Position numbers and translations under genes: made by a program
DNA from: Macrostomum lignano
Taxonomy: Eukaryota
DNA: 56,970 bases
Direction of reading: 5' to 3'
Assembly: GCA_002269645.1 (NCBI GenBank)
Contig: NIVC01002328.1
Coordinates: 1-56,970, forward strand
The notes under the pieces: generated by a model
Seen by the model: only the letters and a program-made list of their open reading frames with translations
Told to the model about the DNA's origin: nothing
Database searches by the model: none
In this document: positions 12,059-50,714 of the stretch, one piece after another
Layout of the letters: every line of letters begins with the position of its first letter
Numbering within the stretch: the first letter of the stretch is position 1

Positions 12059-12068
12059 TTTTTACTGT

Positions 12069-12686
12069 CTATTTTATAGAATCTAAAATACCCCTAAAGT
12101 CTTCGGGTCTTTCCTTCGAGTTATTAATTTTATATAAAAAATACAACGCCGCTTGCCCGCAATAACTTTTGTCAAAGGTTTGAAATTGTTCGTGATAATC
12201 TCCACATAAACGATTTTTAGTATGATTAAATTTATCTTTTATTTCCTGTAACGGAGGAAGCGCGTATGAATCAAAAAAATAAACAAGTTTTGGTTTTGAA
12301 TAAACTGCTGACCAATGAACACCGTTTTCTTTTGTTGTTTCAATATTAACAATGAAAGATCCATATCTTGGTAAGTCTTTTATCTCATCCCGCATAACAC
12401 ATCTAAATGGTTTTATTTTTAACTGCCGCGCCCAATTTGTTAATTCGATATTGCTTGTTGTGTCTGTTCCATATCGTTGTTTGAATATATGCCAATTCAT
12501 GGTCATTTTATGTTCCTGAAAAACTTTGGTTTTAGTTAGTTTAGTAGGTGTGGGTTTTAACAATTCCTTTCTTATTTTATCAGCTTGTAACTGCCTTAAT
12601 TTTGCTAGTTCTAGTTCGTAATTATCTTCAGCTTTTTTAACTTTTTCTGATTGTTTTTTTAGTAAATTATTATTATTATTACCCAT
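12069..12686 (-). CDS. Adenain-like cysteine maturation protease
   Basis: NGVHWSA (His), YFFDSYA (Asp), QTFDKSYCG (Gln/Cys). Confidence 0.92.
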   Translation of the reverse strand: MGNNNNNLLKKQSEKVKKAEDNYELELAKLRQLQADKIRKELLKPTPTKLTKTKVFQEHKMTMNWHIFKQRYGTDTTSNIELTNWARQLKIKPFRCVMRDEIKDLPRYGSFIVNIETTKENGVHWSAVYSKPKLVYFFDSYALPPLQEIKDKFNHTKNRLCGDYHEQFQTFDKSYCGQAALYFLYKINNSKERPEDFRGILDSIK

Positions 12687-12699
12687 TTTTACTATAGGA

Positions 12700-13485
12700 T
12701 TAAACCTGTTTTATACGTAAAATTACTGTTATTGATTGCCCACCAAAACTTATTAATCTATCGCTTTCATCTACAATCCTAATATAAATTGATTGAATAG
12801 TATATTGATTTAAAGGATAATATATTGGGGTTTGGGGTGCAACAATCATTTTCTCTCCAATTGGAACAGCAAGAAACGGGATTGAATAAATAATTCCACG
12901 TTGAACCAAAACCCCATTATCATCTGTTATATAACCGCCGTTTGATATGTCGGTTGTTATATTAATTGTATTAACACCGCCCTCAATGTTTCCCACGGTA
13001 TCACCGGTGCTTGATGCGGTAACTATTCGGGAATTAAATCCAAGTATTGTTCTGAGTGAATTTGCAATTGTAAAATCAACCTGATATCCGGTTCCTAGTG
13101 ATAGGGTGAATCGGCCAGAAGGTAAATCAACGCCAATAACAATCGCGCCCGCTACCCAATCACCATTAGTTGTTAATTCTCCTTCTATATAAGCATTCAA
13201 ATCGGTATAACTATAAGCTCCCGGATTAACGCTAAACGTTGTCCAATTGGCTCCGGAATCTTTAGAATATCTAAATTGATTATTTGTTGCATTAATTAAT
13301 TGAGGCATGTTAAAAACTGAAAACATTATTAAACCAATTTGATAACTTAGGCTTTGATTGAGTTGTAACGGATCGCGCAATATAATCCTTTGTTCGCTGG
13401 TTGTCATTATAAACTGTAGGGTTGTACTAAACTTTGAATTAGTTCGATCTACCAATTGTTTTATAGCGTCTAAATTTGCTGCCAT
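12700..13485 (-). CDS. Minor capsid protein (penton, single jelly roll)
   Basis: Start at TATAAAAATG 13485; N.T..NN.F.YS, PGAYS..DLN, IY.L....I.SI.IRIVDE..R.I.F pattern; position between ATPase and protease. Confidence 0.85.
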   Translation of the reverse strand: MAANLDAIKQLVDRTNSKFSTTLQFIMTTSEQRIILRDPLQLNQSLSYQIGLIMFSVFNMPQLINATNNQFRYSKDSGANWTTFSVNPGAYSYTDLNAYIEGELTTNGDWVAGAIVIGVDLPSGRFTLSLGTGYQVDFTIANSLRTILGFNSRIVTASSTGDTVGNIEGGVNTINITTDISNGGYITDDNGVLVQRGIIYSIPFLAVPIGEKMIVAPQTPIYYPLNQYTIQSIYIRIVDESDRLISFGGQSITVILRIKQV

Positions 13486-13550
13486 TTTTATAGTGGGGAA
13501 TAATAGCATCGGACTTCGTCCGCGAACCATAGGTTCGATCGGCACGCAGA

Positions 13551-14348
13551 CTACGTCTGATCCTCGTCCTCATTATCTTCTTTTATCAAATTTGTTAAGA
13601 TTCGATTTTTTCTTTCTAACCTAGGGTTGATATATATGTGTTTGTATTGACTATCATCCCAAATTTTTTTACACATACTTTTAAATGGTTTTGTATCCAA
13701 CCCAGGATTAAATCTCGCGTGTATATTTTGTAGATCATAGTTATCTAAATCAAACATTACACAACAGCTAGCATTCTTTTTTATAATCGATTCTAATTCT
13801 CTAAAGGATTGAGTAAGATAAAAAGCTCCAATTCCATCTCCTCTACCACTAACAAAAATTTCCTTTTGCAATTCTTGATCTCCATCATTAATACAATCAT
13901 CAAATATAATTAGTGTTTTATCATTTTTTGGGATTTTGTCGTAAGTTAATCGGTTTGATATTGTAATTGTTGGGGGGTTATTGTCCATATTTTCTGGATC
14001 GAACCTTTGGTTCGCGGACTCCGTCCGACCTTCTGCCATTTTTTTACATAAATCCTCAATGTCATTTAGGTTAAATCGCGGGTCATCATCGTCCTCATAT
14101 TGCTCATATGCTCTTAACATTCTAAACAAGATTTCTTTTTTTAATTTGTTTTTTAATCCATGTTTAAGAAATTCATAATATTTTATTCTAGGTTTATTAG
14201 TATAAATTATTAAATTATTATAGTCTAACATTCCATCGGTTGTTAGCAGATCATAAACAAAGTGGGTTTTTCCTTTGCCAGATCCGCCAATTACTAAACA
14301 AAGAAAAGGATCGTTTGGAAATATTTTATTATGTTTTGCTTTTACCAT
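13551..14348 (-). CDS. A32/FtsK-HerA genome packaging ATPase
   Basis: Walker A GGSGKGKT, Walker B LIIFDD, SGRGDGI..FYLTQS. Confidence 0.93.
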   Translation of the reverse strand: MVKAKHNKIFPNDPFLCLVIGGSGKGKTHFVYDLLTTDGMLDYNNLIIYTNKPRIKYYEFLKHGLKNKLKKEILFRMLRAYEQYEDDDDPRFNLNDIEDLCKKMAEGRTESANQRFDPENMDNNPPTITISNRLTYDKIPKNDKTLIIFDDCINDGDQELQKEIFVSGRGDGIGAFYLTQSFRELESIIKKNASCCVMFDLDNYDLQNIHARFNPGLDTKPFKSMCKKIWDDSQYKHIYINPRLERKNRILTNLIKEDNEDEDQT

Positions 14349-14367
14349 TTTTAAATATAAAATTTAA

Positions 14368-15831
14368 CTATTTTTTATCTACTGGTACCTTATTAGCAAC
14401 GGTACCATCTGCTAGAGCATATGCCATATATTCCTCTAGAAGCAATACGTGGGCGTCTAGTGCCTGATTGCCGGTTTTATTAATCTCTAACATATAATTC
14501 AAACCAAGGTTGGCTACATTTTCTTTCTGTGCGGTTAGATCAAAAACAACCACTGGATGAATGTTTAGAAACTCCGTGGGTGTGTACTGAGGAACAGCAT
14601 ACGCTTCATTTTTGACATAATCCTGATAATATTTTATAAAATCATTAACATCATTATTTGCTGTATTTAGATTTAGTACGGTTTTAACTGGATAATATTG
14701 ATCATCAACCTGCAGGCGGATATTCTGAACATTAAACTCGTTAATAGCTGTAACCTCGTTGTCTGTTGCGGTGGCTGCCTGAGCTGCAACGGCTCCTGAT
14801 TGAAGCCAATATAAATCTCCATTTGATCTTTTACTGTTTCTATTTGTTATTTTAAACCATACAAAAATATATCTAGCACGACGTTCTGAAGTAGTTAGCT
14901 GCCACTGGAAATAATCCTGGTTATTATTAATTGTTCGCATAAAGTGCCGCCGATTCAAATAAAAGATTTCCTGATCGCGCATTATCTGCTTATTTATGTA
15001 TTCTAATAGCGGTGCCGTTACCTCGAATTTTGGGACGACTAATTGAATTGATGCTATACGAATTGCGATATCGGTTGAAATCCTAGGCTGATATCCACCA
15101 GATATTTGCAACTGAATACCAAATTTTAATCCTTTCCATACCCGATTTGGTGAGAAGAACCCAAAGAGCGGAAAGATTGAAAAGTCTTGCTCATATGCCG
15201 TTGCCGTGGTTAATACCGCGACTGGGAATTTATTCTGACGATCTATAAAACCAGTGTTAATATCTTTTGTGTTAGTCATTGCAGTTACAACTGGAACGAT
15301 ATTGGTATTAAGATAAGCTATAAGAGCTGCGGTATCTGCGCCGGCTGCATTTTGTACATTAGGGAAAACTACTGCTTGTCCATTGCCCTTATCCGGCATC
15401 CAACCAACATTATCACCAACCTGTTTTGATAAATAAGTATAATTTAAATGTTTCAAAACTCCATTAATCTCAGCTGGGTTTGTTGATGTCTCAACAACGG
15501 CTCCATTAACTGTTAGTTGAGCTTGGGAAAAACATTTATAAAACCAATCATTTTCTATAATAATTCCAGAACGGTCTGCGATATCACCGGCTACAAGAGC
15601 GGTTCCATCGTTTCTGGTATACAACCATCTAACACGGAAAAAGGCATTTTTAAGATCTAATATGCTGTCGGTTGCCCCAATGTCAAAAGCTACAGTTCCA
15701 GTAGTAAAATTGTTTGAGTTATCACTTGTTGGTAGGGTAGCATTTAAATCTCTTGCCCTGATCTCATTAATATACTGTCGATGCTTTTTAAAATGAAATT
15801 TGTCACTCCATATAGTTTTTGTTTCGGCCAT
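14368..15831 (-). CDS. Double jelly-roll major capsid protein (487 aa)
   Basis: FSQAQLTVNG..VE, RYIFVWF, RLQVDDQYYP, VVFDLT motifs; size and synteny typical of Polinton MCP. Confidence 0.85.
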   Translation of the reverse strand: MAETKTIWSDKFHFKKHRQYINEIRARDLNATLPTSDNSNNFTTGTVAFDIGATDSILDLKNAFFRVRWLYTRNDGTALVAGDIADRSGIIIENDWFYKCFSQAQLTVNGAVVETSTNPAEINGVLKHLNYTYLSKQVGDNVGWMPDKGNGQAVVFPNVQNAAGADTAALIAYLNTNIVPVVTAMTNTKDINTGFIDRQNKFPVAVLTTATAYEQDFSIFPLFGFFSPNRVWKGLKFGIQLQISGGYQPRISTDIAIRIASIQLVVPKFEVTAPLLEYINKQIMRDQEIFYLNRRHFMRTINNNQDYFQWQLTTSERRARYIFVWFKITNRNSKRSNGDLYWLQSGAVAAQAATATDNEVTAINEFNVQNIRLQVDDQYYPVKTVLNLNTANNDVNDFIKYYQDYVKNEAYAVPQYTPTEFLNIHPVVVFDLTAQKENVANLGLNYMLEINKTGNQALDAHVLLLEEYMAYALADGTVANKVPVDKK

Positions 15832-15865
15832 TTTTTTAAGTTAAAAAAGTTTTTTATATTAAAAA

Positions 15866-16537
15866 ATGAGTCAATTTATGGACGTTGATGGAGAATTAGC
15901 GATTTATAGAGAGAAGCAAAAATATTCTGATTTTGTTAGAAATTTACAAAAAAGAAAGTTAGGAATACAACTAGCTGGTGATAGATTTGCTGCCCCTTTT
16001 GTTAATCCTATTACGGGCAAACTTAGTGAACTAGAAAAAACAGATAAAGATCTTCTTGAAAAAATTGCCAAGAATACCGAGCCAAAAGAGGATGAAATTT
16101 TAGATGAGCCGCCTACTTATGATGTTGATCAAGCCCTATTGAGAGTTGCTGAGATTAGACGTGCAGAACGGGATGGGGTTGTTGAATATCCGAGAGCTGC
16201 ACCACAAAGTATTGCTGTGACAGATTTAGGTAATGATGACTACCGAATTGGTGGGGTTGATAAAAATCGGAATGATCTATATAGAGAACTGGGCGGAGCA
16301 TATAATATTATTATGAACCCGAGGGTAAAGTTTAACCCTGATTTATATACTAGAGATGAATTAGTAAGTGCTAAAATTTTTTACGATGAGTTAGGAGTAA
16401 GAGCTGCTAAAAATACCAGCTTGTATAAAAGGATTGTTGATTCTATAAATAACAAACCGGCGGTTGGTGAAGGATTTAAAACTCCGCGAAAACTTGTTTT
16501 AGCTGCCGCGAAAGCTGCTGGACATACAGGTGTTTAA
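15866..16537 (+). CDS. Conserved Polinton protein ending GEGF...AAGHTGV (223 aa)
   Basis: Intact ORF; orthologue at 22905-23604. Confidence 0.65.
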   Translation: MSQFMDVDGELAIYREKQKYSDFVRNLQKRKLGIQLAGDRFAAPFVNPITGKLSELEKTDKDLLEKIAKNTEPKEDEILDEPPTYDVDQALLRVAEIRRAERDGVVEYPRAAPQSIAVTDLGNDDYRIGGVDKNRNDLYRELGGAYNIIMNPRVKFNPDLYTRDELVSAKIFYDELGVRAAKNTSLYKRIVDSINNKPAVGEGFKTPRKLVLAAAKAAGHTGV

Positions 16538-16557
16538 TTAAATTTATTTTTTATAAA

Positions 16558-17130
16558 ATGAATGAAACAAAAGTTTGTACTAAGTGTAAACAAGAAAAAC
16601 CAATGACTAAAGAATTTTTTTGTTGGAGAAATGATTCAAAAAATTTTAGAAATGAATGTAGATTATGTCATAATACTTCATCAACTATTTGGATGAAAAA
16701 CAATAAAGATAAATGGAATAAATATTGAAAGAATAAATATCACACCGATGAAAATTACAAAACTATTAATTTAATTAGAAATAGAATAAAAAGGTCATTA
16801 TCAACCTTTAATGATAATGATTATATCTCATATCTTGGTTGCACAAAAGAATTCTTTTTTGATTGGCTAAATTTTACAAGAAATTATTATGTGTCAAAAG
16901 ATTATAATGGTGCTTTACATATTGATCATTTCATTCCCGCTTCATCGTTTATTTACAAGGACGAAGATCAGATGAAAAAGTCTGAACATTGGACAAATAA
17001 AAGATACTTAACTAGTGTAGATAATTGCTATAAAAAAGTTAAGCAACCAACCATCGAAGAATTTGCAAAACAATTGGTGCTATCGTGTATTTTTAAGGCT
17101 ATTAAAAATGAGCAATCAATTAGTATTTGA
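16558..17130 (+). CDS. HNH endonuclease with N-terminal Zn finger (190 codons; in-frame TGA at 16726-16728)
   Basis: Manual translation: MNETKVCTKC...CRLC...YLGC...LHIDHFIPAS...HWTNKRYL...DN..K. Confidence 0.8.
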
Positions 17131-18685
17131 AGGAGGATTTTTAGATGTTCAAAAAGGATTAACAAGCTTACCACCAATATTTACTACTGGGAGGTATACG
17201 GGTGAGCTACACCTGCCATCAATGAACTTCACAGGTTATCCCGTGGCCTGAGTGGTAGAAGCAAAGCTACTGCTAGTCACTATTAGTGGCGATGTCTCCA
17301 AATTGCGTGAAACCCGTCATACAGCTTCAAGTACCACTTCAATTGAGAAATCTTTTGAAGGAACAGAGGTAACTCCTCTTCCCAATGGTAAAAAGCTTGA
17401 AGACATGGTGGCAATGCGCAGCCAAGCTCCTAAGTATTTTAAATATAAGGAGAAGGTTCAGAGAGCAGACGGAGATGGGCGGTAATTATCGCCGCTTAAG
17501 GTGTGCTCCAGCCTCATTCGAAAGATTGGGGGTAAACTACCCGGCACTCGTTTGGATTTAAGATTAAATCCTGACAATACTCCAAAAGCTGATTCAATTC
17601 CAATAAATGGGATTGATTGGTTAGCATACTATCACGACTTAGCATATAGAGATGCTGACAAGAACCCTCCCGAAGAAGCGTTAAGATTAAAACATGAAGC
17701 CAATCAAAAAATGATTCAAGGATTAGATAACTTACAAGGCTTATCAGTAGGCCAGAGATTAACTAGGTGGATGGTTAAAAAGATTCTACAATCTAAAGTT
17801 AAATTTGGTTTAGGAATTAATTACAACCAACATGGTAATAATTGTGTCGAATGTTTGTTATTAAGTGGTAGTGGGCTAAGTTATAATAAGGCTAAGGTTC
17901 TTCATAAAGAATACCGAAAACCTAAATTTTATAGAAAAATCATGAACTTCAAAAAGAATGAAATTTGGTATGCTGATTTAATGTCGATGCCAAATGATAA
18001 AGGATATAAATATATTTTAACAATATTAGATGGTTTTACTCGCTACGCGTGGGCTGTTCCTTTAAAATCCAAAAAGGGAGAGGTGGTTGCTAGTGCTTTT
18101 AGAAGCATTGGAGAAAAAAGTGAAAGGTTGTGTGTTGACGAAGGAAAAGAATTTTACAATCCTCACATGTATAAATTGTATCATTTTGAAAAAGGACAAG
18201 AAAGGAAAAAGGACGCGAATGGGGAGTATATTAATAAAATTTATTCTATTTATGGAGAGAGTAAAAACGCATTAATAGAAAGATTTAATAGAACTTTAGG
18301 TAAGAAATTATGGTTTCAGTTTAGTCTTAATGGTAACCAAAAGTGGGTAAAAATATTACCAGACGTAGTGAAAGATTATAACAATTCATATCATTCAGCT
18401 ATAAAGATGACTCCTCAACAAGCTTATAACAATCCTGAAAATGTTAGGGTTACTTTTGGAGAATTTGAAAAAAAGAAAACTAAAGGTTTTAAAGTTGGTG
18501 ATTCTGTTTATATCTATAAATGGAAAGATAAGTTTGAAAAGGGAAGAAAAGGATATTGGAAAATAAGTGAGAAATTTACTATCAGTAAAGTTTTAAATAC
18601 AAATCCCACCACCTATATCATTGCTGATAAGGATGGTGACGAAATATTGGGTTCATTTTATGAAAACCAGCTAATGCCAGCTTAA
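17108..18685 (+). CDS. Parvoviral-type PLA2 fused to RVE integrase; exons 17108-17236 and 17540-18685 (424 aa spliced)
   Basis: Splicing restores NFTG|PGTRL...YYHDLAY; integrase WYADL / CVDEGKEF / IERFNRTL (DDE) and YNNSYHSAIKMTP. Confidence 0.9.
17237..17539 (+). ncRNA. Group IC1 self-splicing intron (303 nt)
   Basis: P AAUUGCGUGAAA, Q AAUGCGCAGC, R GUUCAGAGAGCAG, S AAGGUGUGCUCC; P7 GAGCA/UGCUC; P1 CAGGU/GCCUG with U-G wobble; P3 UGUCUCC/GGAGAUG; P5abc with GAAA loop and A-rich bulge; L9 GAAA. Confidence 0.92.
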
Positions 18686-18695
18686 GTTCAATCCG

Positions 18696-18920
18696 TTACT
18701 TAAGGCAACAAGGTAGTAAATTTTTTATAACAAACAAAAACAATATTATTACTATTATTGTTACTAATATTATTATTGACATTTGTTCAACAGTTATCAA
18801 ACTTAAATTATCATTAAGGTCATTAATTGGTACATTTCCGATATAGGAATAATTTACCTTCATTTTTTTATATATATTTTTAACAATAAATGTTGTTTCT
18901 GTTATAGAGTAATAGTTCAT
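18696..18920 (-). CDS. Small single-TM protein (74 aa)
   Basis: Hydrophobic C-terminal helix; orthologue at 26220-26438. Confidence 0.6.
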   Translation of the reverse strand: MNYYSITETTFIVKNIYKKMKVNYSYIGNVPINDLNDNLSLITVEQMSIIILVTIIVIILFLFVIKNLLPCCLK

Positions 18921-18923
18921 TTT

Positions 18924-19238
18924 TTACATAAAAATTTCAATTTCGCTCTCTGAATCACTAGTTTCATATGAGCTATTTGTTGAGTTTGAATCATCTGAAC
19001 GAACCTCCCAATCATCTGAATTTAAATAATCTCCAAGTTGAAATATTAACTCACCCTCTTGTTCTAGATCATACAACCCATCCAACTCTAACGGATAAAG
19101 TTTTAGTTCATGCTTATCGTCATATTTTAGATAAACTTCATCAATTATTCCATTCAAAATATGCTGTTTTATTATCTCTGAATTTTTAGCAACAGTCTCA
19201 AAAGTATCACTAATTGAAAAGGTGTAAACGCGGTTCAT
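18924..19238 (-). CDS. Small acidic hypothetical protein (104 aa)
   Basis: ATG at the inner edge of the TIR; near-identical orthologue at 26395-26709. Confidence 0.65.
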   Translation of the reverse strand: MNRVYTFSISDTFETVAKNSEIIKQHILNGIIDEVYLKYDDKHELKLYPLELDGLYDLEQEGELIFQLGDYLNSDDWEVRSDDSNSTNSSYETSDSESEIEIFM

Positions 19239-19600
19239 TTTTAGTAACAGAAAAAGACCCTACGCGCCTGCGGCGCGGCCTGGGGTTATAAAGTAGTAGT
19301 AGGTAAAAGTACGCTTCTAGATCAGACCTATTGAAAATGATGATTGAAGGGCTATTAATGGGGGGACGCGAGGGGATTGTTATTGATGATTTGGGAGTGT
19401 TATTGGTGATTTGGGAGAGTTAGTGGTGATTTGTGTTGTTTTGTGGTGTTGGGGGTGTTGGTGGGAGGTAGTGTGTTTAAGGGGGGTAAAGGGTGTTTAG
19501 ATGTGTTTTTTTAGTACCCCCTCGTGTCCCCCCACTAGCCCTTCAAATCAGCATGTTAAATAGGGGTTCTGGGGCTAGAAGCGTACTTTTACCTACTACT
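19237..19600 (-). repeat. Right terminal inverted repeat of Polinton copy 1
   Basis: Reverse complement of 2067-2430; ends CCTACTACT. Confidence 0.95.
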
Positions 19601-19820
19601 AGCATCCCAACTCAAAGTCATTTTAAGTTATTGAAAAACTTTTTGTTTTTGTTAGTTTATACGTTGATTGTTTTAACAACTCCTTTCTCGTTTTTTCTGC
19701 TTGAAGTTGTTTTAATTTTTTTAATTCAGTTTCATATATTTTTTGGCTTTTTGAACACTATCCGATTGTTTTTTATCTTAGCTTCGATGTTATTACCCAT
19801 TTTAACCTGACTAAACCGGA

Positions 19821-20598
19821 TTAAACTTGTTTTATTCGTAAAATTACTGTTATTGATTGTCCACCGAAACTTATCAACCTTGTTGGTTTCGTCTACAATT
19901 CTAATATAAATCGATTGAATATTATATTGATTTAAATGGGTTTGGGGTGCAACAATCATTTTCTCTCCAATTAGAACAGCCAGAAATGGAATTGAATATA
20001 TTATTCCACGCTGAACCAAAAATCCATTGTCATCTGTTATATAACCACCGTTTGAGATATCAGTTGTAATATTTATTGTATTAACTCAACCCTCAATGTT
20101 TCCTACGGTATCGCCCGTGTTTGATGGGGTAACAATTCGGGAATTAAATCCTAATATGGTTCTAAGTGAATTTGCAATTGTAAAATCAACTTGGTATCCA
20201 GATCCTAGTGATAGAGTGAATCTGCCGGATGGTAAATAAACTCCTGTAACAATTGCGCCTGCTACCGAATCACCATTAGCTATTAATTCTCCTTCTATAT
20301 ACGCATTCAAATCGGTATAACTATATGCCCCCGGATTAACACTAAATGTCGTCCAATTTGCTCCAGAATCTTTAGAATATCTAAATTGATTATTTCTCTC
20401 AATAATTAACTGTGGCATATTAAAAACCGAAAATAAAATTAATCCAACTTGATAACTTAGAGTTTGATCGAGTTGTAACGGATCACGCAATTGAATCTGT
20501 TGTTCGCTTGTTGTCATTATAAACTGTAAGGTTGTGCTAAATTTCTAACTTGTTCTATCAACCAATTGTTTTATGGTGGTTAAGTTGTTTGATGCCAT
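19821..20598 (-). pseudogene. Penton, copy 2
   Basis: Fragments 20086-20517 and 19732-20019 match 12700-13485. Confidence 0.88.
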
Positions 20599-20608
20599 TT
20601 TTATATTG

Positions 20609-21369
20609 TTAAAATTCCGCGTCCTCATCCTCATTCTCATGTAATATATATGTTAAAATTCTATTGTTGCGTTCCAATCTTGAATTAATATATATGTGTT
20701 TGTATTGACTATCATCCCAAATTTTTTACACATACTTTTAAATTGTTTTGTTTCCCTTCCGGGATTAAATCTCCTATGTATATTCTGCAAACCATAATCA
20801 TCTAAATAAAAAATTATACAACAACTTGCATTCTTTTTTATAATTGAATCTAATTCCCTAAATGATTGAGTAAGATAAAATGCCCCAATTCCATCTCCTC
20901 TACCGCTAATAAAAATTTCTTTTTGCAATTCTTGATCACCATCATTAATACAATCATCAAATATTATTAGGGTTTTTATCATGTTTTGGAATTCGATCAT
21001 AAATTATTTTTTTTTGAATTGCTGGTGATTTTTCGCAGATGTTATTTGGATCTAGTGCCATTCTTCTAACCAAATCCTCTATGTCATCAAGTGAGAATTT
21101 TGGATTATCATCATCCTCGTATTGCTCATATGCTCTTAACATTCCAAATAAAGTATCTTTTTTATTTTTTGTTTTAATCCATGTTTAAGAAGTTCATAAT
21201 ATTTAATTTGTGGTTTATTTGTGTACACTATTAAATTGTTATAATCTAACATTCCTTCGGTTGTTAATAGGTCATAAACAAAATGTGTTTTGCCTTTACC
21301 CGATCATCCAATTACTAGACAAAGAAAAGGATCGTTTGGAAATATTGGATTGTGTTTTGCTTTAACCAT
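20609..21369 (-). pseudogene. Packaging ATPase, copy 2
   Basis: LIIFDDCINDGDQELQKEIF fragment; frameshifted. Confidence 0.88.
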
Positions 21370-21417
21370 TTTTAAGGAAACATTTACAATGGTGCGATGG
21401 TCGGAGACCTGCACCGC

Positions 21418-22889
21418 CTACAGCGGGGCGTCCTGAATAACAGTTCCATCGGCTCGTGCAATTGATAGATATTCCTCGAGAAATAATACGTGTGCATCAA
21501 CCACCTGATTTCCTGTTTTATTAATCTCTAACATATAATTCAAACCAGTGTTGGAGCGATTCTCTTTTTGTGCGGTTAGATCAAACACAACAACTGGGTG
21601 AATGTTTAGGAACTAGGTGGGAGTATATTGGGGAGTAGCGTATGCCTCATTTTTAACATAATCCTGATAATATTTGATTAAATCATTAACGTCGTTGTTA
21701 AGAATGTTTAGATTAAGGGGGTCTTTAACCGGATAATATTGGTCATCAACTTGGAGCCGAATGTTGTTCATATTAAAAGCTGTAATTGCTGCGGCTCCAG
21801 TATCAGTTGCATCGGCTGCTATGGCGGCTTAGATTGAATCCAATATAAATCACTGTTGGCTCTTTTAGCATTTGTATTAGTAATTTTAAACCAAACAAAT
21901 GCATATCTCACACGGCGTTTTGATGTGAGAATCTGCCATTGGAATGAATCCTGATTGTTATTAATTGTTCGCATAAAGTGGCGGCGATTCAAATAAAATA
22001 TTTCCTGATCCTTCATTAGCTGCTCATTGATATAAGATAGAAGTGGGGCTGTTACATCAATTGTTGGAACAACTAGCTGGATTAAAGCTATTCGGACGGC
22101 TAAATCGGTTGATGCTGCGGCTCCAAAAAGTATTCTACCCTGATACCCACCAGATATTTGCAACTGCACACTAAACCTAAGTCCCTTCCAAACGCGATTT
22201 GGTGAGAATAAACCAAATAGTGGGAAAATTGAAAAGTCCTGCTCATATGCGGTTGCAGTTGTTAAAACAGCTTCTGGGAATTTATTTTGTCTGTCAATGA
22301 ATCCGGTATTAATATTTTTTATATTACTTATTTGATTAAGAACTCCTTTAATAGCATCTAAATCAGCACTAATTACAGATACTGTGGCGGCTGCTATGTC
22401 TCTATTTGGGGAAAGGTGGCTGTTTGTCCATTACCCTTATCCGGCATCCATCCAACATTATCACCAACTTGTTTTGTTAAATAGGTATAATTTAAATGTT
22501 TCAAAACTCCATTAATCTCTGCTGGATTTGTAGATGTCTCAACCTCAGCTCCATTAATTTTTAGTTGGGCTTGGGAAAAACATTTATAAAACCAATCATT
22601 CTCGATGACACAATGCCAGCACGATTCGGTATATCTGCTGCGACGAGTGCGGTGCCATCATTTCTAGTATATAACCATCTAACTCTGAAAAACGCATGTC
22701 TCATATCCAATATGGTGTTGGTTGCGCCAACATCAGAAGTAACAGTTCCATTAGTAAAGTTGTTTGTATTGTCACTTGTTGGATTGGTATAATTTAAATC
22801 TGTTGCCCTAACCTCATTAATATATTGGCGTCATGGCGTGGTTTTTTGAAGTGGAACCTATCACTCCATCTAGTTTTTGTTTCGGCCAT
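21418..22889 (-). pseudogene. Major capsid protein, copy 2
   Basis: QEIFYLNRRHFMRTINNNQD match; frameshifted. Confidence 0.88.
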
Positions 22890-22904
22890 TTTTATAAGTT
22901 AAAA

Positions 22905-23604
22905 ATGAGTCAATTTATGGATATTGGTGGAGAAATGGCTCTTTATAAAGCTAATAAAAATATTGGATTTTGTTAGAGATTAAAAAAAAGAAAGTTGGGT
23001 TTCGAAATAGCTGGTGAGAAATTTGCTGCTCCTTTTGTTAATCCAATTGTTGGGAAAATTGGTGATCTAACACAAACTTTTGGAACTTTTGAAAAACTTT
23101 TGGAAAAGATTGCTGAGAATACAACTCCAAAAGAGAATGATGGTGTTGATATAGAGGATGAGCCGCCTGTTTATGAGGTGGATCAAGCAATATTGCGAGT
23201 TGCAGAGATTAGGAGGCAAGAAGTGGGCGATCGGGAAGATTTTCCGAGCGGTTCCGCAAAGTATTTCTGTGACAGAATTGCCTAATGATAATTTTCAAAT
23301 TGGCAGGACTGTAAAAAACAGGAATGAACTATATCGGGATTTAGGTGGGGCATTTAATATTGTTACAAATCCTAGAGTAAAGTTTAATCCTGATTTATAT
23401 GACAAAGATGAATTAGTAAGCGCAAAAAAAATTTATGGTGAATTGGGAGAAAGAGCTGTTAAAAACACTAGTTTGTATAAACGTATTGTTAAATCAATAG
23501 AGGCGAAAAGATCCGTTGGATTTAAAACTCCGCGAAAACTTGTTTTGGCTGCTGCTAAAGCTGCTGGACACACTGGTATTAATTATTTTTTTTTAAATGG
23601 ATGA
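22905..23604 (+). pseudogene. Orthologue of 15866-16537
   Basis: FKTPRKLVLAAAKAAGHTG shared. Confidence 0.85.
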
Positions 23605-24683
23605 TACGATAAAGTCCTGTCTTTGTAAACCCATTGATTATAAAACTGGATGTGATAGAATATTGAATAAAATATTTCAAGATGAATTAATAATTGCAAA
23701 TCGTATTAAAACGATTCAGATGCATCTTGGATCTCTTTATGAAGGCTACCGGACATTTGCCCTCCGGCATTTGCCCTCCGGACATTTGCCCTCCGGCATT
23801 TCCCCTCCGGACATTTGCCCTCGAGGACATTTGCCCTCGGGGACATTTGCCCTCCGGACATTTGCCCTCCGGACATTTGCCCTCCGGACATTTCCCCTCT
23901 GGAAAAGTACAGGTAAGGCTGGGGATAGGGTAGGGCGCGGGTATATATTGCTTACTAGAAAAGGATGAGTTGTTGGCTGGAGAAGAACCTGATGGATGCA
24001 AGAGGCGGGAGGATGAGGTTGGTGCTGGAGGAACGACGGGTGGGTACAGGAGGAGGTGAGGTGAGTAATGTGCGAGGGGGTAAATTTGCAGAGGGCAAAT
24101 GTGCGGAGGGGAAATGTCCGGAGGGCAAATGTCCGGAGGGCAAATGTCCGGAGGGCAAATGTCCCCGAGGGCAAATGTCCCCGAGGGGAAATGTCCGGAG
24201 GGCAAATGTCCGGAGGGGAAATGTCCCGGAGGGCAAATGTCCGGAGGGCAAACGCCGCCGAGGGGAAGTGCCGGAGGGCAAGTGCCGGAGGGGAAGTGCC
24301 GGAGGGCAAATGTCCGGAAGCGCTTTATGAATTATTAGCTATTAAACATTTTGGTTTTGAAAAAGTAAAGAAAATTGATTTAGTACATAATGATCGTAAA
24401 GTTGCGTTAGAGTCGAAATCTTCTGATAATACCGATAGTTCTTCAAGCCGATTTAGAAATATTCAAAAGTTGTTGGAGTTTAAAAATATTAATCCTGAAT
24501 TTGATTTGTATTATTTTTGCATTAATAACACTAAAAACCCAATACAAAAAGAATTTGATAATGCTGTTACCTTTAACTGGGGAATTTGCTTTAATTTTTT
24601 TGTATGGTGATAAATATTTGGAAATTATTAAATTGATAGAAGATTGTTTTTTAAGCATTAAAAATGAACTAAATTGTGTATGA
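23597..24683 (+). pseudogene. PD-(D/E)xK restriction-like endonuclease (Eco47II-like), interrupted by a MITE and a frameshift near 24570
   Basis: After removing the MITE: IQMHLGSLYELLAIKHFGFEKVKKIDLVHNDRKVALESKSSDNTDSSSSRFRNIQKL...LTGEFALIFLYG; family assignment is from motif recall (ExKxxxNTxxSSS). Confidence 0.62.
23744..24322. mobile_element. Foldback/MULE-type MITE (579 bp) with 9-bp TSD
   Basis: TSD CTTTATGAA at 23735-23743 and 24323-24331; inverted arms made of 15-bp GGACATTTGCCCTCC tandem units. Confidence 0.9.
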
Positions 24684-26244
24684 AGGTGGATTGTTGGATA
24701 TTCAGAAAGGATTAACAAGCTTACCACCAATATTTACTTGTGGGAAATATACAAATGAATCGCATATTCCGGCTATTCGTTTGCAGGTTACTCGTGGCCT
24801 GAGTGGTAGAAGCAAAGCTACTGCTAGTCACTATTTGTGGCGACACCTTCAAATTGCGTGAAAGCCGTCATACAGCTTCAAGTACCACTTCAATTGAGAA
24901 ATCTTTTAAAGGAACAGAGGTAACTCTCTTCCCACTGGTAAAAAGCTTGAAGACAAGGTGGCAATGCGCAGCCAAGCTCCTAAGTTGATAATTCAGTATG
25001 GAGAAGGTTCAGAGAGCAGACGGAAGTGGATGGTAATTTAGCTACTTAAGGTGTGCTCCAGCCTCTATCGAAAGACAGAGCGTAAACTGCCGGGGACTCG
25101 GTTAGATTTGAGATTAAATCCTGATGACACACCAAAAGCTGATTCAATTCCCATCAACGGTATTGATTGGTTAGCATATTATCATGACTTAGCATACAGA
25201 AATGCCGACAAGAATTCTCCTGAGGAAGCATTAAGATTAAAGCATGAAGCTGATCGAAAGATGATTGAGGGATTAGATAATTTACAGGGATTATCGGTAA
25301 GCCAAAGATTAACTCAATGGGTGGTTAAAAAGATTCTGCAATCTAAAGTTAAATTTGGTTTAGGAATTAATTACAATCAACATGGAAATAATTGTGTTGA
25401 CTGTCTGTTATTACTCATCTGTGGATTAAGTTCTGATGAGGCAAAAACACTTCATAAAGAATACCGAAAACCGAAATTTTACCGAAAAATCATGAACTTC
25501 AAAAAGAATGAAATTTGGTATGCTAACTTAATGTCGATGCCGAATGACAGAGGATATAAGTATATTTTAACTATATTAGATGGTTTTACTCGATATGCGC
25601 GTGGGCTATTCCATTGAAATCCAAAAAAGGTGAAGTTGTTGCTGCTGCTTTTAGAAGTATTGGGGAGAAAAGCGAGCGTTTATGTGTTGATGAAGGAAAA
25701 GAATTTTACAATCCTCATATGTATAAATTATATCATTTTGAGAAAGGAAAAGAAAGGAAAAAGGACGCAAGCGGTGAGTATATCAATAAGATTTATTCTA
25801 TTTATGGCGAAAGCAAAAACGCGTTAATAGAGAGATTTAATAGAACTTTGGGGAAGAAATTGTGGTTTCAGTTCAGTCTTAACGGTAACCAAATGTGGGT
25901 AAAAAATATTACCAGATGTAGTAAAAGATTATAATAATTCATATCATTCGGCGATAAATATGACTCCACAACAAGCTTATAACAATCCTGAAAATGTTAA
26001 AGTTACTTTTAGGGAAGTTGAAAAAAATAAAAAGAAATTTTTTAAAGTTGGTGATCAAGTATATATTTATAAATGGAAAGATAAATTTGAAAAAGGTCGA
26101 AAAGGCAACTGGAAGATTAGTGAGAAATTCATTGTAAGTAAAGTTTTAAATACAAATCCTACAACTTATATCATTGCCGATAAAGATGGTCAAGAAATAT
26201 TAGGATCATTTTATGAGAATCAATTACTTAAGGCAACAAGGTAA
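24664..26244 (+). pseudogene. PLA2-integrase, copy 2 (intron-containing, degraded)
   Basis: Matches 17108-18685; premature TAA at codon 3 and several frameshifts. Confidence 0.88.
24789..25089 (+). ncRNA. Group IC1 intron, copy 2 (301 nt)
   Basis: Same insertion site (GCA GGT|CCG GGG); P/Q/R/S conserved; 11-nt receptor CCUAAG...UAUGG; terminal omega-G at 25089. Confidence 0.92.
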
Positions 26245-26709
26245 TAAATTTTTATAACAAACAAAAACAATATTATTACTATTATTGTTACTAAAATAAT
26301 TATTGACATTTGTTCAACTGTTATCAAGCTTACATTTTCATTAAGTTCATTAACTGTTACATTACCAATGTAGGAATAATTTAACTTCATTTTTTTACAT
26401 AAAAATTTCACTTCGATTGTCTGAATCACTAGTTTCATATGAACTATTTGTTGACTCAGAATCGATTGATCGCATCTCCCAATCGTCTGAATTTAAATAA
26501 TCTTCAAGTTGAAATATTAACTCACACTCTTGTTCAAAATCGTATAAACCATCCAACTCTAGCGGATAAAGTTTTAGTTCCTGCCCATCGTCGTATTTTA
26601 AATAAACTTCATCTATTATTCCATTCAATATATGCTGTTTTATTATCTCTGAATTCTTAGCAACAGTTTCAAAAGTATCGCTTACAGAAAAGGTGTAAAC
26701 TCGGTTCAT
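26220..26709 (-). CDS. Copy 2 orthologues of the small TM and acidic terminal genes
   Basis: ORFs 26220-26438 and 26395-26709 match 18696-19238. Confidence 0.7.
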
Positions 26710-27110
26710 TTTTTGTAACAGAAAAAAGCCTTTTGTGCCCCAAGCGCCTGCGGCGCGGGCGGGGGTTAGAAAGAGTTGTGGGTGTTGGAAGTGTTGGAAG
26801 AGTTAGTAAGTGTTGGTTGTGTAGTAGTAGGTAAAAGTACGCGTATAGGACTGTGCACCTATTAAACATACGATTTGAAGGTCTTGTGGGGGGTACTAGG
26901 GGGTTAGATTCAGATTGTGTTTTTGGTTTTTTTCGATTGTTGGGGATGATTGGAAATGTTTATTTGTGTTTATTGTTTTTTTTTCAATTGTTGGGGAGAT
27001 TAGATGTGTTTATTTGTGTTTTTTAAGTTTCCCCCTAGTACCTCCCACCAGACCTTCAAATCGTATGTTTAATAGGTGCTCTCAGGGATAGACTCGTACT
27101 TTTACCTACT
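26708..27110 (-). repeat. Right TIR of Polinton copy 2 (self-palindromic 26823-27110)
   Basis: AGTAGTAGGTAAAAGTACG ... GTACTTTTACCTACT with long inverted arms. Confidence 0.85.
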
Positions 27111-31041: not shown

Positions 31042-32010
31042 TTGCAGTTGTCACTACAGGCAGTTGTCATGCAGGCAATTGTCACTGCAGGCAGTTTTCA
31101 TGCAGGCAGTTGTCACTGCAGGCAGTTTTCATGCAGGCAGTTGTCACTGCAGGCAGTTGTCATGCAGGCAATTGTCATGCAAGCAGTTGTCATGCAGGCA
31201 GTTGTTGTGCAGGCAATTGTCACTGCAGGCAGTTTTCATGCAGGCAGTTGTCACTGCAGGCAGTTTTCATGCAGGCAGTTGTCACTACAGGCAGTTGTCA
31301 TGCAGGCAATTGTCACTGCAGGCAGTTGTCACTGCAGGCAGTTTTCATGCAGGCAGTTGTCACTGCAGGCAGTTTTCATGCAGGCAGTTGTCATGCAGGC
31401 AGTTGTCACTGCAGGCAGTTTTCATGCAGGCAGTTGTCACTGCAGGCAGTTTTCATGCAGGCAGTTGTCATGCAGGCAGTTGTCACTGCAGGCAGTTGTC
31501 ATGCAGGCAGTTGTCATGCAGGCAGTTGTCATGCAGGCAGTTGTCACTGCAGGCAGTTGTCATGCAGGCAATTGTCATGCAAGCAGTTGTCATGCAGGCA
31601 GTTGTTGTGCAGGCAATTGTCACTGCAGGCAGTTTTCATGCAGGCAGTTGTCACTGCAGGCAGTTGTCACTGCAGGCAGTTTTCATGCAGGCAGTTGTCA
31701 TGCAGGCAGTTGTCACTGCAGGCAGTTGTCATGCAGGCAGTTGTCATGCAGGCAGTTGTCATGCAGGCAGTTGTCACTGCAGGCAGTTGTCATGCAGGCA
31801 ATTGTCATGCAAGCAGTTGTCATGCAGGCAGTTGTTGTGCAGGCAGTTGTCACTGCAGGCAGTTTTCATGCAGGCAGTTGTCACTACAGGCAGTTGTCAT
31901 GCAGGCAGTTGTCATGCAGGCAGTTGTCACTGCAGGCAGTTGTCATGCAAGCAGTTGTCATGCAAGCAGTTGTTGCGCAAGCAGTTGTTGTGCAGGCAAT
32001 TGTGCATAAG
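31042..32010. repeat. Minisatellite, 15-bp unit (GCAGGCAGTTGTCA[T/CT])
   Basis: About 65 units. Confidence 0.95.
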
Positions 32011-32839: not shown

Positions 32840-33938
32840 TGTAAAGGGCCTCTCCCGATTTCTTTATCAATTAGTCACCGGTTAGCCAAATTAAACTCAC
32901 GCAAAAACTAAGAAATATATTTTGTTTTACTACTCGTATTTTCAAAAATATTTCACGCAAATTAATTTTTGTTTTAAATCATCGTAAAAATTAGTATAAA
33001 TAGAAGCGTTTTCGGTGGAGGGAGAACCAACCTCGCGCATTGCAGTTCAATAATAAAACAGTTGATAGCTAATAATAAGAGTTCCAAGAAAATCTAATTG
33101 AAGAGGTGTTTTCTGTGTTAATTCCTTTTAAGAAGTAAGAGTGAAATAGACTGAAGCGTATACAGTATATACTATTGAGAAGCAGCAGTATTGAGTAGTA
33201 AGAGAATATGAAGTAGATCTGAAGTCATACGTGTAAGAATAACCGGAGGCTGTGACCCTCTGATCTCGGTAACACCCAAGGACTTGCAAAGTACATGAAA
33301 TACATATACCAGTATAGCCAATAGACCACTCAGGCCAGAATAATAATAAACGCTACCAGAACAATAGTAAATGCTACTGGAATAACAGGAGAACGAGAAC
33401 AATTGTAAGGGCTAAATAATATTCTAAGAACAATATACTCAGATAAATACTCAGACTAAATACTCAGATAAATACTCAGACTAAATACTCAGATAAATAC
33501 TCAGACTAAATACTCAGATAAATACTCAGACTAAATACTCAGATAAATACTCAGATAAATACTCAGACTAAATACTCAGATAAATACTCAGACTAAATAC
33601 TCAGATAAATACTCAGACTAAATACTCAGATAAATACTCAGACTAAATACTCAGATAAATACTCAGACTAAATACTCAGATAAATACTCAGACTAAATAC
33701 TCAGATCAATTCTAAGAAACATTTCTCGGATTATTCTAAGATTGATAAACTCATAATTTATTAATAGGATAATCCTGGTGGCAGCTACCAACTTAAAAGA
33801 TTAGTGTAGGAAGTTTAGCCCTCTGACAATCCTGGTGGCAGCTAGTAAGGCTAAACAAAAGAATAATTAGGAGCCCTGGGACAGCTTTTGGTAACAACAG
33901 TGGGATATTATTAAGAAGGAAGAATCACCCCTGTTACA
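32840..33938 (+). repeat. 5' LTR (1099 bp) with expanded AAATACTCAGA[T/CT] array at ~33433-33706
   Basis: Near-identical to the 3' LTR except for array length. Confidence 0.92.
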
Positions 33939-46160: not shown

Positions 46161-46244
46161 TTGGTGCTCTCAGATATCTTCATGTTTTTTGTTTCGTACG
46201 ATCACTAAATTTTTTAAATTAAATTTCATCCTTCAAAACTGTCC

Positions 46245-48203: not shown

Positions 48204-48662
48204 CTGAGATAGATTCGACAGGACAGAACGAATCTGTTGAATTAGGAAGAGCAAACATCTAGCTCTAATTAAGATTTGCTTACTCCAATACGAATATCAT
48301 TGCCCGAAAAAATCTGCGACAGTCTTTAAGGCTGTTTGAAGCTGTCTTTAGGCATAATACGTACGAGTGAGTCAATTACATAAATAAAGCAGGAGTGCAC
48401 TCAATGACCCACGAGTCCCAGCCGCGGACAGCTCTGAGGGAAAAGATCTTTGCTAAAATTCTAGTCTTGTAATAAAAGTAAGCAGATTATTTCAGGGGGA
48501 ATCTGCTCGCAGTTCCCTTCTCATGACAGAATGTTAAGTCGGATTATGAGCCTTTAAATACACGCGATTAGACAAAGCTACGAGCGTAAGAAGCTCTACC
48601 AATAAAAACCCGTCTATGTCCGAAGCAAAGCCAGGCAGAAGAAATTTAATAAAAATTCTTAC

Positions 48663-50613: not shown

Positions 50614-50714
50614 CTGGGAATAGGAAAATGAATAATAACTCAAAAGGACAAATACAATGCAATACTAAAATTATTAAAATTATTGCAATACTAAATACTA
50701 AATGCAATACGAGA

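What the first reader, a model, noticed from the sequence alone, without database searches (positions are those of the whole stretch)
24789..25089. Second intron copy provides natural covariation support
Seen: same site, with core motifs conserved while stems vary compensatorily. P3 is UGUCUCC/GGAGAUG versus CACCUUC/GGAAGUG (one mismatch); P9 and P6b differ but keep GAAA and CCUAAG...UAUGG. The IGS GCCUG is invariant although exon codons differ. Inference: the intron predates the split of the two lineages and was kept functional regardless of which nuclease was adjacent.
Basis: seen in the sequence. Interest (0 to 1): 0.7.

Follow-up and report, generated by a model that had tools for sequence, protein, structure and literature searches.

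The report
Group I intron in viral integrase
The flagged 301 bases are a second, partly decayed copy of a self-splicing group I intron in the phospholipase-integrase gene of a virus-like element integrated twice in this genome; the fold is real, but it is shown mainly by relatives from elsewhere, not by this pair of copies.

Summary
Window 24789-25089 is a group I intron (Rfam RF00028, 53.5 bits). Its sister copy is at 17237-17539 (63.1 bits). Both lie between the Gly and Pro codons of the FTG|PGT calcium-loop motif of a phospholipase A2-integrase fusion gene, in two adjacent copies of an endogenous polinton-like virus.

Intronless homologs read straight through this site, while the Rfam hit ends 9 nt early. 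P3, L9 GAAA and the IGS are as described. Copy 1, however, has UAAGG rather than UAUGG in the receptor.

Covariation from the two copies alone is thin: 73 of 93 pairs never vary, 4 change on both sides, and about 8 are broken in copy 2. A third same-site copy from a metagenome and related giant-virus RNA-polymerase introns make the support strong (20-26 double-sided pairs against 2-7 in slid controls).

The intron is about 3 times more conserved than synonymous sites, so it was under long-term constraint. "Kept functional" is only partly supported:
- Copy 2 sits in a decayed element and carries derived helix-breaking changes.
- Copy 1 ends in A instead of the terminal G.

Two unrelated nuclease genes sit just upstream of the two copies. 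One of them lies inside the intron in the metagenome copy. Group I introns in such elements were already reported in 2025.

The parts
24789..25089 (+). Group I intron, copy 2 (301 nt). This is the finding itself.
   Evidence: Rfam RF00028, 53.5 bits, over 24765-25080. The 3' end is set at 25089 by intronless homologs and by P10. The last base is G.
24797..24801 (+). Internal guide sequence GCCUG of copy 2. It pairs with exon CAGGU (24784-24788) to form P1, with a U.G wobble at the splice site.
   Evidence: Intron-bearing alleles all have T at position -1; intronless alleles have C or G.
24844..24850 (+). P3 5' strand CACCUUC. It pairs with GGAAGUG (25022-25028) with one C.A mismatch.
   Evidence: L010 has the intact version, CACCUUC/GGAGGUG, so the mismatch is derived in copy 2.
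24876..24952 (+). P5abc-type extension: P5a, P5b with a GAAA loop (within 24895-24903), P5c and an A-rich bulge.
   Evidence: Helices 4-7 each show 4-7 pairs with double-sided changes across six sequences. In copy 2, P5b has a derived C.A mismatch and P5c a 1-nt deletion.
24979..25001 (+). 11-nt tetraloop receptor CCUAAG...UAUGG flanking the P6b hairpin UUGAUAAUUCAG.
   Evidence: The P6b sequence differs in every relative but always forms a hairpin.
25014..25058 (+). P7 pseudoknot strands GAGCA (25014-25018) and UGCUC (25054-25058), enclosing P3' and a weakened P8 (25029-25045).
   Evidence: P7 is invariant in all sequences. P8 folds at -0.8 kcal/mol in copy 2 against -8.4 in copy 1.
25063..25089 (+). 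P9 hairpin with a GAAA loop (25063-25080), followed by the 9-nt tail CGUAAACUG ending in the terminal G.
   Evidence: The Rfam model stops at 25080.
24664..24788 (+). Exon 1 of the PLA2-integrase gene, copy 2. It is decayed: TAA at codon 3 and a 1-nt deletion near the 3' end.
25090..26244 (+). Exon 2 of the PLA2-integrase gene, copy 2, broken into three reading-frame pieces.
   Evidence: ORFs 25051-25617, 25614-25934 and 25960-26244. Indels are listed.
23597..24683 (+). Free-standing Eco47II-like nuclease gene remnant upstream of copy 2. It is split by inverted 15-nt tandem arrays and a frameshift near 24580.
   Evidence: 67% identical over 88 aa (E 1e-31) to the ORF inside the L010 intron. 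The N-terminus matches at 43%. Weak Pfam RE_Eco47II hit for the L010 ORF. Repeats are and reading frames.
17237..17539 (+). Group I intron, copy 1 (303 nt). All helices are intact, but the last base is A.
   Evidence: Rfam 63.1 bits. Structure. The 3' end is set by homology.
17108..17236 (+). Exon 1 of the PLA2-integrase gene, copy 1 (43 codons, ending ...NFTG).
17540..18685 (+). Exon 2 of the PLA2-integrase gene, copy 1 (PGTRLDL... through the rve core and C-terminal domain). The reading frame is intact.
   Evidence: The protein spliced at 17236|17540 scores PF08398 at 24.7 bits (cut-off 23.9) plus rve.
16558..17130 (+). Free-standing HNH/endonuclease VII-like gene upstream of copy 1, with an in-frame TGA at 16726-16728.
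   Evidence: phrog_1035 'endonuclease VII' E 1.3e-9 and phrog_2255 'HNH endonuclease'. Sequence.

Best explanation
The feature is a roughly 300-nt group I self-splicing intron. It has P1-P2-P2.1, a P5abc extension, an L5b GAAA loop with an 11-nt receptor in P6, the P3/P7 pseudoknot, and P9 with a GAAA loop. It is inserted between the Gly and Pro codons of the calcium-loop motif (F-T-G|P-G-T) of a phospholipase A2-retroviral-type integrase fusion gene. The gene belongs to a polinton-like virus that is present as two adjacent endogenous copies (about 2067-19601 and about 19604-26800).

Splicing would use the IGS GCCUG paired to exon CAGGU, with a U.G wobble at the 5' splice site. It would use a terminal G 9 nt beyond P9, helped by P10 pairing with the first bases of exon 2. 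Removing the intron rebuilds the phospholipase motif.

The intron was under purifying selection while the two viral lineages diverged. After integration, copy 2 (the finding) began to decay and copy 1 lost its terminal G.

In both copies an endonuclease gene of a different family sits just upstream of exon 1. I infer that these acted as free-standing homing endonucleases that moved the intron together with themselves. This step is inferred, not shown.
For: Intron identity:
- Rfam scores are above the gathering threshold for both copies and for the third same-site copy, L010.
- Intronless homologs are colinear across the site and give no Rfam hit.
- The homology-based junction lifts PF08398 above its cut-off, 24.7 against 18.1 bits.

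Fold:
- With three same-site copies, 92% of cells are paired and 20 of 93 pairs change on both sides, against 2-5 in slid controls and 0 of 500 shuffles.
- With six family members, 92.9% of cells are paired and 26 of 58 pairs change on both sides, against 3-7 in slid controls.
- P6b, P8 and P9 form hairpins from unrelated sequences in every relative.

Constraint:
- The intron is 89.3% identical, against 69.7% at third codon positions and 94% at first and second positions of exon 2.

Decay of copy 2:
- Polarised changes are and energies.

Nuclease context:
- The intronless allele L013 has no nuclease gene between the same two neighbouring genes.
Against: - No splicing was observed. There are no transcript data.
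- Copy 1 ends in A. By established knowledge of group I introns, this should block exon ligation. The only in-frame G (17530) would insert GKL into the calcium loop.
- The reference structure was drawn on copy 1, which biases comparisons of 'intactness' in its favour.
- The outgroup polarisation rests on a single sequence (L010).
- P8 and P6b registers in copy 2 are uncertain.
- Cleavage specificity of either nuclease is unknown. The HNH-like gene carries a stop codon and the Eco47II-like assignment is below the Pfam cut-off.
- The host organism is not identified.
Confidence: 0.85

Rival explanations
1. One reading: both window copies are functional ribozymes, kept intact by selection since before the two lineages split, whichever nuclease lies alongside.
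For: The site and IGS are the same in both copies. The intron evolves about three times more slowly than synonymous sites. Copy 1 helices are all paired. There are four double-sided changes between the two copies.
Against: The copy 2 lineage has at least five derived pair-breaking changes, deletions in P5c and P8, and a much weaker fold. It sits in a gene with a premature stop and frameshifts. Copy 1 has lost the terminal G. The pairwise covariation signal is marginal (21 of 500 shuffles).
Confidence: 0.2
2. The two copies acquired the intron independently, or re-acquired it, by homing into the same conserved site. Different nucleases drove each event, so the similarity reflects recent transfer rather than common descent plus selection.
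For: The distribution among close integrase relatives is patchy. P0001 (70% identity) is intronless. P0003/L012 (68%) has a different intron variant at the same site. L010 (58%) has an intron closer to the window's. The intron is more similar than the flanking synonymous sites. Different nuclease genes are adjacent.
Against: There is no co-conversion tract. The 45 nt upstream of the intron are the most divergent stretch (54.5%), and the first 300 nt of exon 2 (85.7%) are no more similar than the rest. The 32 intron differences are concentrated in a few stems rather than spread as in a recent copy.
Confidence: 0.2
3. The substitutions between the two copies are simply neutral decay of two dead endogenous copies and are random with respect to pairing. 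The apparent compensation is chance.
For: For the copy 2 lineage most paired-site changes do break pairs, and many are G-to-A or C-to-T. The pairwise test is weak.
Against: Copy 1 lineage changes in P3 (five substitutions) all preserve pairing. Adding relatives gives 20-26 double-sided pairs against 2-7 in controls. Exon 2 shows a clear coding signature, 94% against 69.7%, so most of the divergence predates inactivation.
Confidence: 0.1

Closest known systems
Group I introns reported in endogenous polinton-like viruses of Rhodomonas lacustris (cluster C3/GKS1, n=44) and Paulinella micropora (n=53), PMC12220804 (Microbiome 2025)
   Same: They are RF00028 hits of about 300-380 bp inside endogenous polinton-like viruses that carry an rve integrase. 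The paper describes the host gene as a short (~50 aa) unannotated protein near the capsid gene. Here the exon 1 reading frame runs 48 codons to the first stop inside the intron.
   Different: The paper reports only the Rfam hits. Here the 'short protein' is shown to be exon 1 of the PLA2-integrase gene. The exact splice junction, the fold with covariation, the adjacent nucleases and the decay state are also worked out. I could not confirm that the window comes from one of those species.
Group I introns with GIY-YIG or HNH homing endonucleases in giant-virus RNA polymerase genes (e.g. Bodo saltans virus, PMC5871332)
   Same: L002, L004, L009 (a giant-virus MAG), L003 and L005 carry introns in the RPB1 NADFDGDEMN motif. 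These share the window intron's core almost base for base (CGCAGCCAAGCUCCUAA, GGAGAAGGUUCAGAGAGCAGACGG, AAGGUGUGCUCC), as well as P5abc and the receptor.
   Different: The host gene and insertion site differ. Those introns carry a GIY-YIG ORF inside the intron. The P3, P5, P8 and P9 sequences differ, with compensation.
Tetrahymena-type (IC1-like) group I introns
   Same: The shared features are P2/P2.1, a P5abc three-way extension with an A-rich bulge, an L5b GAAA loop docking on a CCUAAG...UAUGG receptor in P6a/b, and an L9 GAAA loop. This comparison rests on established knowledge of the IC1 architecture, not on a tool result.
   Different: There are no P9.1/P9.2 extensions, the tail after P9 is only 9 nt, and the intron sits in a protein-coding viral gene rather than in rDNA. 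Formal subgroup assignment was not tested.
[quoted passage not shown] 2009, as cited in PMC11296320)
   Same: The intron has no ORF of its own, and an endonuclease gene sits about 100-180 bp upstream of the insertion site. The same nuclease family is found inside the intron in a relative (L010). An allele lacking both intron and nuclease exists (L013).
   Different: Nothing is known about cleavage sites. The elements are eukaryotic virus-like elements, not phages. Both nuclease genes in the window are damaged.

Membership tests
Group I intron (Rfam RF00028) | Covariance-model score at or above the family's gathering threshold (50 bits) | tested here: met
   Copy 2 scores 53.5 bits and copy 1 scores 63.1 bits. 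The same-site relative L010 scores 65.3 bits.
Group I intron (Rfam RF00028) | Conserved core helices P3-P8, including the P3/P7 pseudoknot, supported by covariation | tested here: met
   92-93% of cells are paired and 20-26 pairs change on both sides, against 2-7 in slid controls. P7 itself is invariant, so it is neither supported nor contradicted by covariation.
Group I intron (Rfam RF00028) | 5' splice site after a U that forms a U.G wobble with the internal guide sequence in P1 | tested here: met
   Exon CAGGU pairs with IGS GCCUG in w1, w2 and L010 (helix 1). Intronless alleles have C or G at position -1.
Group I intron (Rfam RF00028) | Terminal G as the last intron nucleotide | tested here: inconclusive
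   Copy 2 (25089), L010, L011 and L012 end in G. Copy 1 (17539) ends in A. The feature is met for the flagged copy but not for its sister.
Group I intron (Rfam RF00028) | Interrupts a gene whose intronless homologs are colinear across the site | tested here: met
   P0001/L013 and P0004/L017 read FTG-PGT and FAG-PGT without the insert. PF08398 is restored above its cut-off by the junction.
Group I intron (Rfam RF00028) | Guanosine-dependent self-splicing activity | not testable with these tools
   This needs an in vitro splicing assay or cDNA.
P5abc-bearing (IC1-like) subgroup | P5abc extension, L5b GNRA loop and 11-nt receptor in P6 | tested here: met
   P5a, P5a', P5b and P5c covary (helices 4-7). 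GAAA loops are present. The receptor is canonical in copy 2 and a UAAGG variant in copy 1. No formal subgroup classifier was available.
Classical mobile group I intron (intron-encoded homing endonuclease) | An endonuclease ORF inside a peripheral loop of the intron | tested here: not met
   The window copies are 301 and 303 nt with no nuclease ORF. The 77-aa ORF at 17252-17485 is only the ribozyme core read in the frame that L010's ORF tail uses. L010 does have a 233-aa ORF in the P2.1 loop.
Intron plus free-standing homing endonuclease (collaborative homing) | A nuclease gene adjacent to the intron-bearing gene that cleaves the allele lacking intron and nuclease | not testable with these tools
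   Adjacency is met (16558-17130 and 23597-24683), and an empty allele exists (L013). Cleavage specificity is untested.
Polinton-like virus (endogenous) | Capsid and packaging ATPase module, an integrase and terminal inverted repeats | tested here: inconclusive
   Pox_A32-type ATPase, rve integrase and a 375-bp inverted repeat, 2067-2435 against 19233-19600. The 487-aa putative capsid protein had no significant family hit, and no target-site duplication was seen.

The most novel reading that the evidence does not exclude
The window and its relatives may capture successive stages in the making of a mobile group I intron in eukaryotic virus-like elements. L013 lacks both intron and nuclease. The window copies have an ORF-less intron with a free-standing nuclease just upstream, of two unrelated families. 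L010 has the same Eco47II-like nuclease inside the P2.1 loop. The ribozyme itself belongs to a lineage shared with giant-virus RNA polymerase introns, which suggests exchange between giant viruses and the small viruses that parasitise them.
Probability: 0.3. Interest if true: 0.6.

Novelty: new member of a known kind. Interest (0 to 1): 0.38.

Why it matters
- It corrects an annotation. The 'short unannotated protein' said to host these introns, and the database proteins that start MCSS... inside the intron (P0002, P0025), are pieces of one phospholipase-integrase gene.
- The intron splits the calcium-binding loop of the phospholipase domain, so integrase expression depends on splicing.
- The set of alleles found here (empty, intron plus free-standing nuclease, nuclease inside the intron) gives a testable natural series for how introns and homing endonucleases join up, in eukaryotic viruses rather than phages.
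- The near-identical catalytic core in giant-virus polymerase introns hints at traffic of selfish RNA elements between giant viruses and their hyperparasites.
- As a structural finding it is ordinary. It confirms the standard group I fold.

Tried and rejected
Alignments were therefore made with MAFFT, and P6b, P8 and P9 were left out of the six-sequence count because MAFFT did not align them structurally.
- Viral-contig scans with AATGCGCAGCCAAGCTCCTAAG and AAGGTGTGCTCCAGCCTC found nothing.
- The gapped IGS pattern hit only a GC-rich phage by chance (L014). L008 is also a chance match.
- A protein-guided scan of viral contigs gave only two distant, apparently intronless integrase loci (L015, L016).
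- The Rfam 3' end (25080/17530) was rejected as the splice site. It would insert three residues (RKL or GKL) into the YxGxG loop, it lowers the PF08398 score, and it gives no P10 pairing.
- The PDB sequence search and NCBIfam gave nothing useful for the nucleases. Pfam gave no hit for the HNH-like ORF, even at E 10.
- TGA as a sense codon in the HNH-like ORF was considered and set aside, because the same ORF ends in TGA.
- The apparent A-U to U-A 'compensation' in P9 is better read as two independent repairs of an ancestral U.U mismatch seen in L010.

Full report
WHAT IS THERE

A permissive Rfam scan of the window finds two group I intron matches and nothing else of note: 17227-17530 at 63.1 bits and 24765-25080 at 53.5 bits. 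The default scan kept only the second. The flagged interval, 24789-25089, is the second match.

A self-comparison of the window shows two adjacent copies of an AT-rich element. Region 12489-16568 matches 19604-23607 at 75% identity, and 17090-19304 matches 24648-26783 at 81%. A 375-bp inverted repeat (2067-2435 against 19233-19600) bounds the first copy. The element encodes:
- an A32-type packaging ATPase,
- a 487-aa putative capsid protein with no family hit,
- an rve integrase.

I read it as an endogenous polinton-like virus in a repeat-rich, GC-richer host genome.

THE HOST GENE AND THE EXACT JUNCTION

A database search with the joined exons returned about 120 homologs. Many carry the Pfam domains Phospholip_A2_4 (PF08398) plus rve. 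The uninterrupted homologs P0001 (70% identity) and P0004 read ...YNFTGPGTRLEL... and ...YSFAGPGTNLD.... The window copies have ...NFTG before the intron and PGTRLDL after it.

The Rfam model stops 9 nt short because it ends just after P9. Four results support this junction:
- With it, the spliced copy 1 protein scores 24.7 bits on PF08398 (cut-off 23.9). With the Rfam end it scores 18.1 bits.
- The first exon 2 bases can pair with the bases 5' of the IGS (P10) at this junction, with a C-G to A-U switch between copy 1 and L010. They cannot at the Rfam end (from the sequences).
- Related giant-virus introns also have tails after P9.
- The intronless alleles L013 and L017 have GGC and GGG as the Gly codon, whereas all three intron-bearing alleles have GGT. 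This supplies the U for the U.G wobble of P1.

THE FOLD

On copy 1, I could write a complete group I structure with all helices paired apart from three internal mismatches, the two U.U pairs in P5b and one U.U in P9. It comprises:
- P1 (exon CAGGU with IGS GCCUG), P2 and P2.1,
- P3, P4 and P5,
- a P5abc-type three-way extension with an A-rich bulge and a GAAA L5b loop,
- P6/P6a with an 11-nt receptor, and P6b,
- P7 (GAGCA/UGCUC, a pseudoknot with P3) and P8,
- P9 with a GAAA loop and a 9-nt tail.

THE TWO COPIES COMPARED

The two introns differ at about 35 positions, 26 of them paired and 9 unpaired. Of 93 pairs:
- 73 never vary.
- 4 change on both sides and stay paired (one in P3, two in P6b, one in P9).
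- 6-7 change on one side through wobble.
- About 8 are broken or lost in copy 2 (P2.1, P3, P5, P5b, P5c, P8).

In the formal count, 4 double-sided pairs compare with 0-2 in slid controls, and 21 of 500 shuffles reach that value. Two sequences alone therefore give only marginal covariation support.

- Copy 1 has UAAGG, not UAUGG, in the receptor.
- The invariant IGS is unremarkable, because the five exon bases it pairs with are also invariant.

MORE COPIES

Two database proteins that begin MCSSLFRKIEGELPGT... (P0002, P0025) are gene calls that start inside the same intron.
- P0002's contig, L010, carries a third full copy at the same codon boundary: 694-1528, 835 nt, Rfam 65.3 bits. It has a 233-aa ORF in the P2.1 loop.
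- L011, the contig of P0025, holds the 3' half of another copy.
- L012 holds the last 53 nt of a different variant at the same site, with a canonical UAGUC P7 strand and no P9.

A scan for the core 18-20-mer also recovered introns in giant-virus RPB1 genes, at the NADFDGDEMN motif and with GIY-YIG ORFs: L002, L004, L009, L003 and L005. These share the same P4-P6-P7 core, P5abc and receptor.

Counts on these alignments:
- Copy 1, copy 2 and L010 with its ORF removed: 92% of cells paired, and 20 of 93 pairs changed on both sides, against 2-5 in slid controls and 0 of 500 shuffles.
- Six sequences over P3-P7: 92.9% paired, and 26 of 58 pairs changed on both sides, against 3-7 in slid controls.
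- P6b, P8 and P9 form hairpins from unrelated sequences in every member.

The structure is therefore well supported, but by the wider family rather than by the window pair.

WAS IT KEPT FUNCTIONAL?

Two things point to long-term constraint.
- The intron is 89.3% identical between copies. Exon 2 is 94% identical at first and second codon positions and only 69.7% at third positions. Most of the divergence therefore happened under selection, and the intron evolved about three times more slowly than synonymous sites.
- There is no co-conversion tract. The last 45 nt of exon 1 are only 54.5% identical.

The present loci are not both sound, however. With L010 as outgroup:
- The copy 1 lineage's five P3 substitutions all preserve pairing.
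- The copy 2 lineage has single pair-breaking changes in P2.1, P3, P5, P5b and P8, plus deletions in P5c and P8.
- The consensus fold is worth -73 kcal/mol in copy 1 and -37 in copy 2. The MFE z-scores are -2.6 and -0.7. The structure was drawn on copy 1, which biases this comparison in its favour.
- Copy 2's gene has TAA at codon 3, a 1-nt deletion in exon 1 and frameshifts in exon 2.
- Copy 1 has all helices intact but ends in A where all four relatives have G. From established knowledge of group I chemistry, this should block exon ligation. The only in-frame G (17530) would insert GKL into the calcium loop.

THE NUCLEASES

Between the conserved 223-aa gene and exon 1, the two copies carry unrelated inserts.
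- Copy 1 has an HNH/endonuclease VII-like ORF at 16558-17130 (phrog_1035, E 1.3e-9), with an in-frame TGA.
- Copy 2 has the remains of an Eco47II-like gene at 23597-24683. It is 67% identical over 88 aa to the ORF that sits inside the L010 intron. The Pfam hit for this family is weak. The gene is split by inverted arrays of a 15-nt repeat and a frameshift.
- In the intronless allele L013, the 223-aa gene homolog abuts the integrase gene directly, with neither nuclease nor intron.

This arrangement resembles 'collaborative homing' of phage introns with free-standing endonucleases, and the proposed route by which such nucleases end up inside introns (cited in PMC11296320). That is an inference from gene arrangement only.

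WHAT IS ALREADY KNOWN

PMC12220804 (2025) reports RF00028 hits in endogenous polinton-like viruses of Rhodomonas lacustris (44) and Paulinella micropora (53). It describes the R. lacustris introns as lying in a gene for a short (~50 aa) unannotated protein. That description fits exon 1 here, so the existence of such introns is not new. Introns with homing endonucleases in giant-virus polymerase genes are also known (PMC5871332).

What this analysis adds:
- the identity of the host gene and the exact insertion site,
- the fold with its covariation support,
- the decay state of each copy,
- the nuclease series,
- the close kinship with giant-virus RPB1 introns.

VERDICT

It is a new member of a known kind and of moderate interest. 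The interest lies mainly in the nuclease-intron arrangement and the link to giant-virus introns, not in the covariation itself.

Noticed in passing
window 17539 (compare 25089; L010 1528): The last base of intron copy 1 is A. Copy 2 and three relatives have the terminal G. The rest of copy 1 is structurally intact.
   Followed up: partly
window 23749-23903 and 24091-24318: There are two arrays of a 15-nt GC-rich repeat (CCGGACATTTGCCCT, about 10 and 15 copies) in opposite orientation. They form a foldback-like insert that splits the Eco47II-like nuclease gene of element copy 2.
   Followed up: partly
window 16558-17130: The HNH/endonuclease VII-like ORF has an in-frame TGA at 16726-16728 and ends in TGA, overlapping the start of exon 1 by 23 nt. 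It is probably a pseudogene.
   Followed up: partly
window 17192-17236 vs 24744-24788: The last 45 nt of exon 1, between the nuclease gene and the intron site, are only 54.5% identical between copies. This is far below the intron (89%) and even below third codon positions (70%). It could reflect decay or divergence of a nuclease target. It remains unexplained.
   Followed up: no
L010 776-1477: The intron ORF in the metagenome copy starts in the P2.1 loop and runs on through P3-P8. Its last ~75 residues are encoded by the ribozyme core. The same frame is open in window copy 1 (the 77-aa ORF at 17252-17485).
   Followed up: partly
L012 1-53: A contig whose integrase is 68% identical to the window's carries a different intron variant at the same site. 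It has an L010-like P8, a canonical AAGAUAUAGUCC P7 strand and no P9 hairpin. The contig is truncated.
   Followed up: no
L006 130-4472 (IMGVR_UViG_3300046779_002345): This viral contig has four separate RF00028 hits within 4.5 kb, at 95, 87, 52 and 32 bits.
   Followed up: no
P0002, P0025 (protein database): These gene calls begin MCSSLFRKIEGELPGT..., which is inside the intron 3' part. The window ORFs at 17501-18685 and 25051-25617 do the same. This is a systematic misannotation of the integrase N-terminus.
   Followed up: yes
window 2067-2435 and 19233-19601; 19604 onward: The element copy 1 terminal inverted repeats begin AGTAGTAGGTAAAAG. The flanking hexamers differ (TGCGTA and AGCATC), so no target-site duplication is seen. 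The second, 5'-truncated copy starts 3 nt after the right repeat.
   Followed up: partly
window 4974-7007: A 677-aa ORF in element copy 1 has an Endonuclease_7 domain (PF02945, E 4.7e-8).
   Followed up: no
window 28000-53300: The flank is GC-rich with many long tandem-repeat arrays (31044-32003, 41100-43250, 45330-46170, 48727-49427, 50711-51414, 52364-53240). It also has an OTU-protease ORF (47092-48258) and a 96% repeat pair (32840-33938 against 38507-39406).
   Followed up: no
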